Shown piece after piece: positions 47,508 through 50,643 of a stretch of DNA of 64,000 bases. A program made the position numbers and the translations under genes. The notes under the pieces are model-generated. The model saw only the letters and a program-made list of their open reading frames with translations. It did not search any database and was not told the DNA's origin. The stretch lies in the sequence record OR413578.1. One strand, given 5' to 3'. Each line of letters begins with the position of its first letter. Within the stretch, counting starts at the first letter, position 1.

Positions 47508-47567
47508 TCACGTTTTGGGTGTATATTGTGTATACACCCAACCCCTAATTGCAAAAGGATTATTACG

Positions 47568-48188
47568 ATGAGTCGTCGCAAAAAGAAACCCGCTTATAAC
47601 CCACGTAAAGACGCACGCGATTTCGTCAAGGCGATGATGCAGTCTGTGTTGAAAAAACAAGCTGTGTTTATCGAAAGTACCGAATTCCTGTCAGGCAAAA
47701 TTGATCGGGAGCGTGAAGTAACTGAAGCCATTGCGCACGAAGAGCTGAAAGCTTTCACGTTGAAAGCGCTGGATGAAGCACAAGCGGCATTCCTCGGCAT
47801 GTGCCAACAAGGCAAAGAGCTGTTCGGTAAACTGATTGTTGAGGCAGATGCTAAGGCTGTGCCGGTGTTTGACATGCTGAACGATAACAGCAAAACCTGG
47901 AAAGAGGTTAAAGACCAGTTCCATGTCGACCACACCGAGCTGTCTTTGATTGACCAGCGGGCGAATATGCTCGCGATGGATATCCAGGGCACCAGTATCG
48001 AAATCTTCTCTACGTATAACGCGAAAGTGAAGTTCGTGAAGCAGGCGCTGAATAACGGTCATACCGTGGAACAAGCCGAAGTTCTGTTGGCCGAAGCTCT
48101 GGCTAATAATTCGAAAGAACTCCCTAAAAACGCCATCGTCGATCACAACGACGTTGTAGTAGAAACCGAGGAAGCGGCACATGTCTGA
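47568..48188 (+). CDS. Hypothetical helical protein with a basic N-terminus
   Basis: SD AAGGA; MSRRKKKPAYNPRK; 206 aa. Confidence 0.75.
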   Translation: MSRRKKKPAYNPRKDARDFVKAMMQSVLKKQAVFIESTEFLSGKIDREREVTEAIAHEELKAFTLKALDEAQAAFLGMCQQGKELFGKLIVEADAKAVPVFDMLNDNSKTWKEVKDQFHVDHTELSLIDQRANMLAMDIQGTSIEIFSTYNAKVKFVKQALNNGHTVEQAEVLLAEALANNSKELPKNAIVDHNDVVVETEEAAHV

Positions 48189-50148
48189 GATCCAAGATCA
48201 GCGTCCGGGTAATGCCCGTCGCCCTAATCCCGATCAGCCAGCCCCTGTGGCGGCTGCTACCCAACAAGAGATGATTCTTCCGACCGTGCCTGATGACGCG
48301 AATCCGGATGCAATCATCATGGCTATTAAACAAGCCAACCCCGATTTTTCTTTTGCCCGTGCAGAAGAAGTTTATCACCAACATTATCATCAGCCGGAGC
48401 CTAAGCTCGAGCGTCCGACGTTTGTAGAAGAAGCTTTGCCAGAACCGGCACCGGTACAGCCTGTAGCCCAGACCTTCTCTGAACAGGTGCACGAGCATAT
48501 TCATCACGCCCCAGAACCGGTGGTAGAGAAAGCGCCTGCGGTAGAACCTGCTCCGCAGCCAAAAGCTCCGGAAGCGGTTGCACCGGCACAGCCGGCTGTA
48601 AAAGAAATGGAAGACGCAGCACCGAAGGTTCCGGAACAACAACAGGTGCGTGAGATTGACTTCGGTAATACCCATTTAGCTGAAACCGCCGAAATGGGTG
48701 AAGACGAAGCCGATCGTATTCTGACACAGTCGAAGATGTTGATTGGTCTGAAACAAGACCCTAACATCATTGCAGACTCCCTGCAAAAGTTCCTCGGTAA
48801 TATTAAACGTTCACCGAAAGACGGTCGGCTGCTGTTCGAAAGTCCTGAACAACAACAGGTCTACGACGACATCTATCGTGCTTTGAACATGACACCGCCA
48901 CGTCTACAGGACGGCGTACCGGCATTCGCTGGTGCACTGGACCGTGGTGACACCGCTTGGGAACAGCGTGTGATGTTGCCGGACGGTAAGGCATCTGGTG
49001 CTATTGCGCCGCGTGACAATATGCACACTGGCGCGCTGGCTGCTTTGCGTCGTGTACGTAAGTCGGGTATTCCGAACATGGTTTGGTTGCCGGCCACAGG
49101 TATCTACGTGGGCTTCCGCGCACCGCATGAACGCGACCTTTGTGATTTCGACATGCGTCTAACACTGGAAACTGCGACCATCGGTATGCAGACCTACGGA
49201 TTGATGCTGTCGTCGTCTTCTGGCGTGTACATGCGTCACATGGTTGAATTCGCACTTCAGTTTGTTACCGAAGCAACCATCGATTGTGCGGGTAACGATC
49301 TGCGTACGGTGCTGTTGGATACCATTGATCTGGCTGACTACTGGCTGGTTATTCTGGGTCCGTTGCAGGCGAAGTGGCCGTCTGGTATTCCATGGACGCT
49401 GATGTGTGGCGAAGACGGTTGCACTCAGCAGGAAGATGTGAAGCTGAATATCGCACGTTGTATCCGTTTTGGTTCCGGTCTGTTTAGCGACCTGCAGAAA
49501 CAACTGTGGGCACGTCAGCGCGGTACTGAGCGTCCAGTGATTTCTATTGCTGAACAGCGCGAATATATCGCGGCGCATCAGGTTGACCCATCCTCGGTAT
49601 TTGAATACCACGACGTGCGTGTTGAATTTGGCCGTTCTACCCTGGGTAGCTTCTTTGACTCCACTGAGAAGTGGATTGAAGACGTTAACGCATCAACTAC
49701 GGCAGCGCTGTCTGAATTTGCTACCGAGCGTGAACGTGAATCCCATATGCGTTTAACTGCGGAAGCCCGTCGCTTAACGCGCTACGCTCACATGGTGAAA
49801 TCTATCACTGTTAATGAGCAACGTGAAGTAAACGGTGAAATGCAGGTTATCCCACAAACTGAAACCGACACAGCGAAAATCGTTGAGATGCTGGAAGAGC
49901 TGTCTTCCGACCGTATATACGTTGGTCAGTTTGAAAACGCGATTGCTGAATACAACGAACGTACACGTTTAGCGGTATTCGGTTACATGGGTAAACGCTG
50001 CCCGGCGTGCGGTAAAACACACGGCGAGAAAGACGGTCTGTATCGTGGTATTGTTACCATCTCACCGGACAGGGTTTTTTTCGTGCTCTCTCGAGTGGTG
50101 TCCGAGATTCAGAAATTCTTGCTGGATCAATACGCCGATATTGGCTAG
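48181..50148 (+). CDS. Putative tail/baseplate assembly chaperone (G-like, T4 gp26-like) with a Pro/Ala/Glu-rich N-terminus
   Basis: 655 aa; CGEDGC and CPACG Cys motifs; ends in a slippery site. Confidence 0.6.
   Translation: MSEIQDQRPGNARRPNPDQPAPVAAATQQEMILPTVPDDANPDAIIMAIKQANPDFSFARAEEVYHQHYHQPEPKLERPTFVEEALPEPAPVQPVAQTFSEQVHEHIHHAPEPVVEKAPAVEPAPQPKAPEAVAPAQPAVKEMEDAAPKVPEQQQVREIDFGNTHLAETAEMGEDEADRILTQSKMLIGLKQDPNIIADSLQKFLGNIKRSPKDGRLLFESPEQQQVYDDIYRALNMTPPRLQDGVPAFAGALDRGDTAWEQRVMLPDGKASGAIAPRDNMHTGALAALRRVRKSGIPNMVWLPATGIYVGFRAPHERDLCDFDMRLTLETATIGMQTYGLMLSSSSGVYMRHMVEFALQFVTEATIDCAGNDLRTVLLDTIDLADYWLVILGPLQAKWPSGIPWTLMCGEDGCTQQEDVKLNIARCIRFGSGLFSDLQKQLWARQRGTERPVISIAEQREYIAAHQVDPSSVFEYHDVRVEFGRSTLGSFFDSTEKWIEDVNASTTAALSEFATERERESHMRLTAEARRLTRYAHMVKSITVNEQREVNGEMQVIPQTETDTAKIVEMLEELSSDRIYVGQFENAIAEYNERTRLAVFGYMGKRCPACGKTHGEKDGLYRGIVTISPDRVFFVLSRVVSEIQKFLLDQYADIG
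50076..50107 (+). other. Candidate programmed -1 ribosomal frameshift signal
   Basis: In-frame heptamer T_TTT_TTC (50076-82); stem TCTCG/CGAGA 6 nt downstream; -1 frame open 50016-50564. Confidence 0.6.
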
Positions 50149-50192
50149 ACCAGGAAGACGTTCCGTCCGAGCAAATTATTACAACGCTCAAG

Positions 50193-50564
50193 ATGGATAC
50201 CACCTCTCTCTTCAAGCAGCGCAGCACACGTCCTATTACGTATCAGGAAGCCCATAACGAGCTTCTGGAAGCGTATGACCGTACACTGGCTCTTAATACC
50301 GGCGACCATCAGGTAGGGTTGTCGGATTTTGAAAACCCGGTATACGGTAGTCTTTACGATATCTGGTACGCCACTTACTTACGTGAAGAGGTCGGTGAAA
50401 ACTACCGGATGTCGATAGACGAGTTCCTCGACCGTCCCCGCTGGCAGATACTGCTGATGCTCGACAATATCCGTCGTCGCAAAGCAATTATCGCCAAAGC
50501 CGGCGAACAGGTGGCAGGTGAACGTGCGCTAAAGGAGCTGGAGAAAGATCTGACGGGACATTAA
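50193..50564 (+). CDS. GT-like/T4 gp51-like extension; probably translated via -1 frameshift from the 48181 ORF
   Basis: No SD before ATG 50193; YRMSIDEFLDRPRWQILLML resembles chaperone C-terminal domains. Confidence 0.6.
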   Translation: MDTTSLFKQRSTRPITYQEAHNELLEAYDRTLALNTGDHQVGLSDFENPVYGSLYDIWYATYLREEVGENYRMSIDEFLDRPRWQILLMLDNIRRRKAIIAKAGEQVAGERALKELEKDLTGH

Positions 50565-50572
50565 TAGAAATT

Positions 50573-50588
50573 CGGGGCTTCGGCCCCG
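50573..50588 (+). terminator. Intrinsic terminator with UUCG loop
   Basis: CGGGGC-TTCG-GCCCCG followed by a T-tract. Confidence 0.8.
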
Positions 50589-50643
50589 TTTTCTTTTTTT
50601 ATTCGCCTTGGTATGAATGCCCTTTTCACTATGGAACAGAGCC

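What the first reader, a model, noticed from the sequence alone, without database searches (positions are those of the whole stretch)
48181..50564. Candidate programmed -1 frameshift making a 655/794-aa G/GT-type protein pair
The 655-aa ORF reads AGG GTT TTT TTC at 50071-82, giving an in-frame T_TTT_TTC heptamer, with a TCTCG/CGAGA stem 6 nt downstream. I read the -1 frame codon by codon: it is open from 50016 through to the 123-aa ORF (...FRALSSGVRDSEILAGSIRRYWLDQEDVPSEQIITTLK-MDTTSLF...), whose own ATG has no SD. The fusion would be 794 aa. This mirrors tail-assembly chaperone recoding (lambda G/GT; P2 E/E+E' uses a U-run), and the halves resemble T4 gp26/gp51. Here, however, the locus is far from tube and tape-measure genes and carries a long Pro/Ala/Glu N-terminus. 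I am not aware of this being described for nucleus-forming jumbo phages.
Basis: partly seen in the sequence, partly recalled or inferred. Interest (0 to 1): 0.8.

Follow-up and report, generated by a model that had tools for sequence, protein, structure and literature searches.

The report
Conserved -1 frameshift in jumbo-phage gene
A core gene of SPN3US/phiKZ-type giant phages carries an ancient, unannotated "slippery" run of U's where some ribosomes probably shift back one base, making a 655-aa and a 794-aa protein from one gene. The signal is kept in every relative examined.

Summary
The window is Salmonella phage SPLA1a (SPN3US-like); the ORFs are SPN3US gp39 (655 aa) and gp40 (123 aa).

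- **The site.** The T7 run gives an in-phase T_TTT_TTC heptamer, and the -1 frame is open from 50016 to 50564.
- **Conservation.** I read 19 distinct lineages: Seoulvirus, five Erwinia-phage genera, phiKZ-like PA7, PhiPA3, RSL2, Moabite, a Vibrio phage, a Bacillus jumbo phage and metagenomic contigs. Every one keeps a T6-T9 run at the same aligned Phe-Phe, with T_TTT_TTN in phase in 18 of 19. Each also keeps a 154-174-codon -1 ORF where the contig allows.
- **Coding signal.** The "intergenic" 44 nt vary like codons of the -1 frame.
- **No conserved start.** The small ORF's ATG is not kept. In several lineages the first possible start lies 85-101 codons into the conserved -1 ORF.
- **No fusion.** No in-frame fusion appeared among 1.84 billion proteins.

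Sequencing error and two independent genes are therefore very unlikely. Ribosomal -1 frameshifting is the best mechanism, and transcriptional slippage is the main rival. The downstream stem has no covariation support.

Function is uncertain. There is weak, collinear similarity to T4 gp26 (hub-assembly chaperone). There is none to gp51 and none to lambda G/GT.

No paper or record describing this was found. No product has been shown.

The parts
48181..50564 (+). The recoded gene taken as one unit (SPN3US gp39 + gp40 equivalents): one shared start and two alternative ends
   Evidence: The same arrangement is seen in all relatives.
48181..50148 (+). 0-frame ORF, 655 aa (homolog of SPN3US_0039, phiKZ gp077, 201phi2-1 gp136, PhiPA3 gp074). 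Residues ~70-170 are a Pro/Ala/Glu-rich stretch of variable length. The conserved core runs from about residue 296 to 636 and has two Cys pairs (C409/C414, C607/C610).
50016..50148 (+). Overlap zone where both the 0 frame and the -1 frame are open. It holds the T7 run / T_TTT_TTC heptamer at the position named in the finding, and the 5-bp stem 6 nt after it. Sequence variability is depressed at all three codon positions.
50082..50564 (+). -1-frame extension domain: 160 codons plus stop, predicted all-helical. It includes the 44 nt annotated as intergenic (50149-50192).
50193..50564 (+). Annotated 123-aa ORF (SPN3US_0040). Its ATG is not conserved: the aligned codon is TTG, CTC, CTG or CTT in other genera.
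50573..50600 (+). Intrinsic-terminator-like hairpin (6 G-C pairs, TTCG loop) plus T tract, just after the -1 stop. No such site lies between the two ORFs.
47526..48188 (+). Upstream neighbour (SPN3US gp38 / phiKZ gp078 homolog, ~205 aa). It overlaps the big ORF's start by 8 nt and sits directly upstream in all 17 annotated records read.

Best explanation
Gene 39 of SPN3US-type phages, and its homologs across phiKZ-like (Chimalliviridae) and related jumbo phages, is decoded in two ways. Most ribosomes read the 0 frame to the UAG at 50146-50148 and make a 655-aa protein. At the U_UUU_UUC heptamer, both the P-site and the A-site codons are read by tRNA-Phe. A fraction of ribosomes slips back one base there, both anticodons re-pair with UUU, and translation continues for 160 codons in the -1 frame to the UAA at 50562-50564. 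That gives a 794-aa protein with the same first 634 residues and a different, helical C-terminal domain. The 'gp40' ORF is therefore mainly the 3' part of this trans-frame product, not an independent gene.

Shown here: the signal, its phase, the open frame, their conservation, and codon-like evolution of the -1 stretch. Inferred: that slippage occurs, that it happens on the ribosome, its efficiency (probably low, since no conserved stimulator was found), and that both products are functional (the overlap evolves under double constraint). The likely role, at much lower confidence (~0.4), is a non-virion morphogenetic factor distantly related to the T4 gp26 hub-assembly chaperone, with the ratio of the two forms set by the slip frequency.
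For: 1. Heptamer in phase and -1 frame open in the window.
2. Nineteen distinct lineages were tabulated. All keep a T6-T9 run at the aligned Phe-Phe, and all place the downstream ORF in the -1 frame. The heptamer is T_TTT_TTC, T_TTT_TTT or T_TTT_TTA in 18 of 19 and G_TTT_TTT in PhiPA3. The -1 ORF is 154-174 codons long in the 18 lineages whose contig reaches its stop.
3. The codon before Phe-Phe varies in amino acid (V, L, I, T, G, S) but ends in T in 18 of 19. In Bacillus phage AgentSmith the second Phe is Leu (TTA), yet the heptamer pattern is kept. The constraint is therefore on nucleotides.
4. The 44 'intergenic' nt vary by -1-frame codon position as 0.28/0.18/0.58. The small ORF gives 0.33/0.20/0.56. 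The overlap zone is depressed at all positions.
5. The ATG of the small ORF is replaced by Leu codons, some of which cannot start translation (CTC, CTT), in other genera. The first possible start in the -1 frame lies 85-101 codons after the heptamer in PA7, AgentSmith, AH06 and two IMG/VR contigs.
6. The -1 pieces of PA7 and PhiPA3 align from their first residue, E 8e-26.
7. In 1.84 billion representative proteins the -1 domain occurs only as short ORFs (71-146 aa among the credible hits). No genuine in-frame fusion was seen.
8. Run length varies from 6 to 9 while the phase is kept, and a T6 run (Vibrio phage, PhiPA3) is short for polymerase slippage (own knowledge).
9. Both ORFs lie on one transcription unit that ends in a terminator at 50573.
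Against: - No product has been observed. I found no mass-spectrometry, ribosome-profiling or RNA data for this locus.
- No conserved stimulatory structure was found. Downstream 60-nt folds have z near 0 in 17 of 19 lineages, and the 5-bp stem shows no covariation.
- U-only heptamers are, to my knowledge, only modestly shift-prone in enterobacteria.
- The in-phase heptamer partly follows from the conserved Phe-Phe, so phase conservation is weaker evidence against transcriptional slippage than it looks.
- In some lineages a start codon lies close enough for part of the domain to be made independently as well (ATG at +37 here).
- The functional assignment rests on weak similarity only.
Confidence: 0.72

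Rival explanations
1. Transcriptional slippage. The phage or host RNA polymerase stutters on the T run, so a share of mRNAs carries a run of different length and encodes the long protein in one frame. The protein outcome is the same but the machine differs.
For: The signal is a pure homopolymer. It reaches T8-T9 in AH06, RSL2 and the IMG/VR contigs. No conserved RNA stimulator for ribosomal shifting was found. These phages transcribe with their own unusual multisubunit polymerases, whose slippage behaviour is unknown (own knowledge).
Against: Runs of only 6-7 T occur in most lineages, and 6 T in the Vibrio phage and PhiPA3. That is short for efficient slippage by bacterial polymerases (own knowledge). 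The T before Phe-Phe is kept in phase in 18 of 19 lineages, which fits tRNA re-pairing, although it would also lengthen the run.
Confidence: 0.15
2. Two ordinary genes. gp40 is started independently (at the ATG here, at other or non-canonical codons elsewhere), and the shared frame relation reflects tight packing or coupling.
For: An ATG exists at 50193, and gene callers annotate a separate small ORF in every record. Short ORFs of this family are all that the databases hold.
Against: - There is no SD before the ATG, and the ATG is not conserved.
- Sequence upstream of every possible start evolves as -1-frame codons and aligns as protein between distant phages.
- Annotated starts differ from record to record, and the annotated ORFs range from 68 to 146 aa.
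- The frame relation and the T run are kept in 19 of 19 lineages.
Confidence: 0.06
3. Assembly or sequencing error in a homopolymer: the real gene is a single ORF.
For: Homopolymers are error-prone. Some SPFM assemblies of this phage group are visibly riddled with indels (36-40 alignment pieces over 2.4 kb).
Against: The same frame relation appears in 34 near-full-length records from different laboratories and in distant genera, although run length itself varies from 6 to 9. The 0-frame tail after the run has a conserved length and pattern.
Confidence: 0.01

Closest known systems
Lambda G/GT and P2 E/E+E' tail-assembly-chaperone frameshift (conserved -1 frameshift of long-tailed phages)
   Same: A nested pair with a shared N-terminal part. 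The -1 slip occurs at a heptamer near the 3' end of the upstream ORF. The longer form gains an extra domain. The signal is conserved over very divergent sequences. A morphogenetic role is likely, and the minor product probably has fixed stoichiometry.
   Different: The protein family is unrelated: there is no chaperone family or fold hit, and the best 'tail assembly chaperone' Foldseek match has E = 6. The gene is not between tube and tape-measure genes; its neighbours are helicase, RNA polymerase subunits and DNA polymerase. The products are about five times larger. The heptamer is U-only.
T4 gp26 / gp51 baseplate hub assembly chaperones (Pfam PF12322 T4_baseplate)
   Same: Motifs are collinear: a first Cys pair, a beta segment, an 'AH.V..I' helix, CPxCGK, and a C-terminal FF.L. 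T4 gp26 ends three residues after its FF, where the jumbo-phage 0-frame product also soon ends. Foldseek matches a 'Baseplate hub assembly protein, T4-like' at E = 9.6e-4. T4 gene 26 is also annotated with two nested products, 26 and 26'. Some GenBank records already label homologs 'baseplate hub assembly protein'.
   Different: No PF12322 hit for the window protein or 12 relatives at E <= 1. Profile-profile support is weak (probability 66% against one sequence, 3% against a family). The protein is three times longer. T4 has TTC TTT (not slippery) and no -1 extension. The -1 domain has no T4 counterpart.
E. coli dnaX tau/gamma -1 frameshift
   Same: A -1 slip on a homopolymer-rich heptamer gives two functional proteins from one gene at a set ratio.
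   Different: In dnaX the shift shortens the protein and is driven by a strong upstream SD-like element and a downstream hairpin (own knowledge; summarised in PMC7412058). Here the shift lengthens the protein, and no conserved stimulator was found.

Membership tests
Programmed -1 ribosomal frameshift site | X_XXY_YYZ heptamer in the phase of the upstream frame | tested here: met
   T_TTT_TTC in the window. T_TTT_TTN in 18 of 19 lineages, G_TTT_TTT in PhiPA3.
Programmed -1 ribosomal frameshift site | -1 frame open from the heptamer into a substantial coding region that evolves as protein | tested here: met
   160 codons here and 154-174 elsewhere. Codon-position pattern of variability. PA7 and PhiPA3 pieces align from residue 1, E 8e-26.
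Programmed -1 ribosomal frameshift site | Stimulatory RNA structure 5-9 nt downstream (or an upstream SD-like element) | tested here: inconclusive
   A 5-bp stem lies 6 nt downstream, but z = -0.66, there is no compensatory change, and z is near 0 in 17 of 19 lineages. I saw no consistent upstream purine element by eye.
Programmed -1 ribosomal frameshift site | Trans-frame protein detected; slip occurs on the ribosome, not the polymerase | not testable with these tools
   No proteomic, ribosome-profiling or RNA data for this locus were found.
Tail assembly chaperone pair (lambda G/GT type) | Gene pair located between the tail tube and tape-measure genes | tested here: not met
   Neighbours are helicase, hypothetical proteins, RNA polymerase beta-like subunits and DNA polymerase.
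Tail assembly chaperone pair (lambda G/GT type) | Chaperone family or fold | tested here: not met
   No Pfam hit. Foldseek gives only the protein's own family; 'Tail assembly chaperone [Bacillus phage JL]' has E = 6.2.
Tail assembly chaperone pair (lambda G/GT type) | Nested products made by a conserved -1 frameshift | tested here: met
   At sequence level only.
Pfam PF12322 T4_baseplate (T4 gp26/gp51) | Match to the family HMM above its cut-off | tested here: not met
   T4 gp26 and gp51 both hit PF12322 (E 9e-64 and 4e-52). The window protein and 12 relatives give no hit at E <= 1.
Pfam PF12322 T4_baseplate (T4 gp26/gp51) | Profile-level or fold-level similarity over the domain | tested here: inconclusive
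   hhalign against T4 gp26: probability 66%, E 5.6e-5 over 81 columns. Against a 7-member gp26 alignment: collinear over 188 columns but probability 3%. Against gp51: CPxC only. Foldseek E = 9.6e-4 to a T4-like hub assembly protein, from a low-confidence model with pLDDT 54.
Pfam PF12322 T4_baseplate (T4 gp26/gp51) | Assembly factor that is absent from, or scarce in, the finished virion | tested here: inconclusive
   No chain in the PDB copy matches the family profile, which includes a phiKZ-like member. gp39 and gp40 are not named in the SPN3US virion-proteome papers or their held supplements. This is absence of evidence only.

The most novel reading that the evidence does not exclude
The frameshift is an ancient, family-wide recoding event. 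It predates the split of Chimalliviridae from related Bacillus jumbo phages and fixes the stoichiometry of two forms of a gp26-like hub or virion assembly factor, making it a baseplate-side counterpart of the tail-tube G/GT system. Because no cis-acting stimulator is conserved, its efficiency could depend on trans factors, for example the ribosome-binding proteins these phages are known to make. That would make it a regulated rather than a constitutive shift.
Probability: 0.2. Interest if true: 0.75.

Novelty: new member of a known kind. Interest (0 to 1): 0.62.

Why it matters
If confirmed, jumbo-phage genome records mis-annotate a widely conserved gene. All 17 annotated records I read split it into a large protein and a variably started small ORF (68-146 aa). 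The gp40/201phi2-1 gp135-type family would then be the C-terminal domain of a trans-frame protein. This would add a second, independent case of frameshift-controlled protein pairs in phage morphogenesis, outside the tail-assembly-chaperone genes. It would also give a conserved natural U-run slip site that works in hosts as different as Pseudomonas, Salmonella, Vibrio, Ralstonia and Bacillus. Finally, it points to a two-form protein to look for in studies of how these large virions are assembled.

Tried and rejected
- **Structure of the big ORF.** AlphaFold2 with 26 homologs gave a poor model (mean pLDDT 54), so its Foldseek matches are only hints.
- **Deepening the alignment.** The last homolog search, made with a mixed alignment, did not return phiKZ-type members.
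- **The search for related loci.** With PhiPA3 it found only PhiPA3 itself.
- **Family scans.** Pfam and PDB sequence searches of both pieces found nothing. PHROGs returned only families of unknown function. A marginal PDB hit of the small ORF (5dmp, E 0.003) vanished with a profile.
- **T4 profile.** Adding gp51 to gp26 in a 2-sequence profile lowered the hhalign signal.
- **gp38.** It shows no similarity to the gp26 family.
- **P0054.** This 312-aa protein looked like a natural fusion. It is a Caitlin-like metagenomic ORF with one frame change at a different place, most likely an assembly error, so I did not count it.
- **Sequencing error and independent genes.** I rejected both for the reasons given under the rival explanations.

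1. In my private reasoning after I once wrote a short string that put a few residues of the 0 frame next to residues of the -1 frame.
2. I treated the run as a recoding signal, which is the subject of the finding, not as a break.

All searches used single-frame pieces.
Full report
**Identity.** The 2.4-kb region is 100% identical to Salmonella phage SPLA1a (OR413578.1) and 96.7% identical to SPN3US, genus Seoulvirus. In the original SPN3US record the two ORFs are SPN3US_0039 (656 aa) and SPN3US_0040 (123 aa), both labelled hypothetical. Notes in the PhiPA3 record equate the large protein with phiKZ gp077, 201phi2-1 gp136 and EL gp47, and the small one with 201phi2-1 gp135. The neighbours are a helicase, two small hypothetical genes, RNA-polymerase beta-like subunits and a DNA polymerase. 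They are not tail genes.

**Observation.**
- The 655-aa ORF spans 48181-50148 and the 123-aa ORF spans 50193-50564 in the -1 frame.
- A T7 run reads GTT TTT TTC in the 0 frame.
- The -1 frame is open from 50016 to 50564.
- The -1 frame has no ATG, GTG or TTG before 50193.
- I see no SD-like sequence before the ATG.
- By arithmetic the long product would be 634 + 160 = 794 aa.

**Conservation.** I read the locus in 17 annotated phage records and 5 IMG/VR contigs, which make 19 distinct lineages. The lineages are:
- Seoulvirus;
- Erskinevirus, Machinavirus, Wellingtonvirus, Derbicusvirus and Agricanvirus (Erwinia phages);
- Phikzvirus (PA7) and Miltoncavirus (PhiPA3);
- Chiangmaivirus (RSL2) and Moabitevirus;
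- a Vibrio Aphroditevirus;
- Bacillus phage AgentSmith and its uncultured relatives.

In all of them the downstream ORF is in the -1 frame and that frame is open across a T6-T9 run. The run sits at the same aligned Phe-Phe (F633/F634). The heptamer in 0-frame phase is T_TTT_TTC, T_TTT_TTT or T_TTT_TTA in 18 of 19 lineages and G_TTT_TTT in PhiPA3. The -1 ORF after the run has a nearly constant length of 154-174 codons; one contig ends early. The codon before Phe-Phe encodes V, L, I, T, G or S but ends in T in 18 of 19. AgentSmith has Phe-Leu with TTA, so the heptamer is kept even where the amino acid is not. None of the 17 records annotates a joined CDS.

**The -1 stretch is coding.** Across nine taxa at 45-100% protein identity, the 44 nt annotated as intergenic vary by -1-frame codon position as 0.28/0.18/0.58. 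That is the same pattern as the small ORF (0.33/0.20/0.56). The 63 nt between the heptamer and the 0-frame stop are depressed at all three positions (0.12/0.23/0.27), as expected if both frames are read. The codon aligned with the small ORF's ATG is TTG, CTC, CTG or CTT in other genera. The first possible start codon in the -1 frame lies anywhere from before the heptamer to 101 codons after it. It lies more than 85 codons into the conserved ORF in PA7, AgentSmith, AH06 and two IMG/VR contigs. The -1 pieces of PA7 and PhiPA3 align from their first residue (36% identity, E 8e-26).

**No natural fusion.** I searched 1.84 billion representative proteins with the single-frame -1 piece. It returned only short ORFs (71-146 aa among the credible hits) plus a few artefacts from error-rich assemblies.

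**Mechanism.** Sequencing error is excluded by the independent genomes. Two independent genes is very unlikely, given coding sequence upstream of any start codon. The remaining choice is between ribosomal -1 frameshifting and transcriptional slippage, which give the same protein.

I favour the ribosome at about 5:1, for two reasons. The heptamer phase is kept while run length varies. Runs of only six T occur, which is short for polymerase slippage (own knowledge). The argument is not decisive, because the conserved Phe-Phe by itself imposes much of the phase.

However, the local fold is ordinary (z = -0.66), there is no compensatory substitution in eight relatives, and 60-nt downstream folds have z near 0 in 17 of 19 lineages. 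I therefore expect a low, constitutive slip frequency unless a trans factor acts. A terminator-like hairpin follows the -1 stop at 50573, and none separates the ORFs.

**What the protein is.**
- Pfam gives nothing. PHROGs gives only families of unknown function.
- The family alignment shows an N-terminal Pro/Ala/Glu-rich stretch of variable length. That stretch is absent in phiKZ-type members. It is followed by a conserved core with two Cys pairs, probably a zinc site, that ends in FF.L.
- T4 gp26 and gp51 are paralogs in Pfam PF12322 and are listed as hub-assembly chaperones (PMC3004832).
- The family profile matches T4 gp26 residues 127-207 at hhalign probability 66%, E 5.6e-5, including CPxCGKTH and the terminal FF.L.
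- Against a seven-member gp26 alignment the match is collinear over 188 columns but statistically weak (probability 3%). Against gp51 only the CPxC motif aligns.
- A low-confidence model hits a 'Baseplate hub assembly protein, T4-like' in BFVD at E = 9.6e-4.
- T4 gp26 ends three residues after its FF (TTC TTT, not slippery).
- The -1 domain is predicted all-helical (pLDDT 77). It matches only its own family in Chimalliviridae and neither T4 protein.
- No PDB chain matches the family. gp39 and gp40 are not named in the SPN3US virion papers, while gp38 was seen with four spectra.

A non-virion assembly role is therefore plausible but unproven.

**Literature.** Nine full-text searches found no description of this site. 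The terms covered SPN3US, phiKZ, 201phi2-1, Chimalliviridae and jumbo phage, mostly combined with frameshift terms or the gp numbers. Subscription-only papers were not searchable.

**Verdict.** This is a real, deeply conserved recoding signal that current annotation misses. The mechanism is of a known kind, in a new gene family and a new phage group. The function of both forms remains open.

Noticed in passing
window 50573-50600: A strong intrinsic-terminator-like hairpin (CGGGGC TTCG GCCCCG plus a T tract) lies right after the small ORF. It marks the 3' end of a gp38-gp39-gp40 unit.
   Followed up: partly
window 48181-48188: The upstream gene (gp38 homolog) overlaps the big ORF's start by 8 nt. 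The gp38-gp39-gp40 order is kept in every annotated relative read, which suggests one functional module.
   Followed up: partly
window 48390-48700 (big ORF residues ~70-170): The Pro/Ala/Glu-rich, low-confidence N-terminal stretch varies greatly in length between genera and is missing in phiKZ-type homologs. It looks like a disordered linker. It might instead be a propeptide, but I did not test this.
   Followed up: no
whole window, + strand: There are twelve T runs of 7 or more on the + strand against two on the - strand (about 3 expected by composition). Most are probably terminator tails of a mostly + strand gene array.
   Followed up: no
P0001, P0010: Near-complete jumbo-phage contigs (240 kb and 222 kb) are deposited under Escherichia coli and Salmonella Agona names. 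They are either phage carried in, or contaminating, bacterial assemblies.
   Followed up: no
LR5359xx SPFM records: Several SPFM phage assemblies align to this 2.4-kb region in 36-40 pieces and produce fragmentary ORFs (P0026, P0029-31, P0038-40). These are error-rich assemblies and should not be used to judge homopolymer length.
   Followed up: partly
P0077: A 279-aa fragment identical to the N-terminal 43% of the big ORF is labelled 'DNA-directed RNA polymerase subunit F' by JGI. This is probably a spurious label from the low-complexity region.
   Followed up: no
L024 7803-8429 (T4 gene 26): The T4 record annotates two nested products of gene 26 (26 and 26', the second from an internal start). 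This is a different route to two forms of a hub-assembly protein.
   Followed up: no
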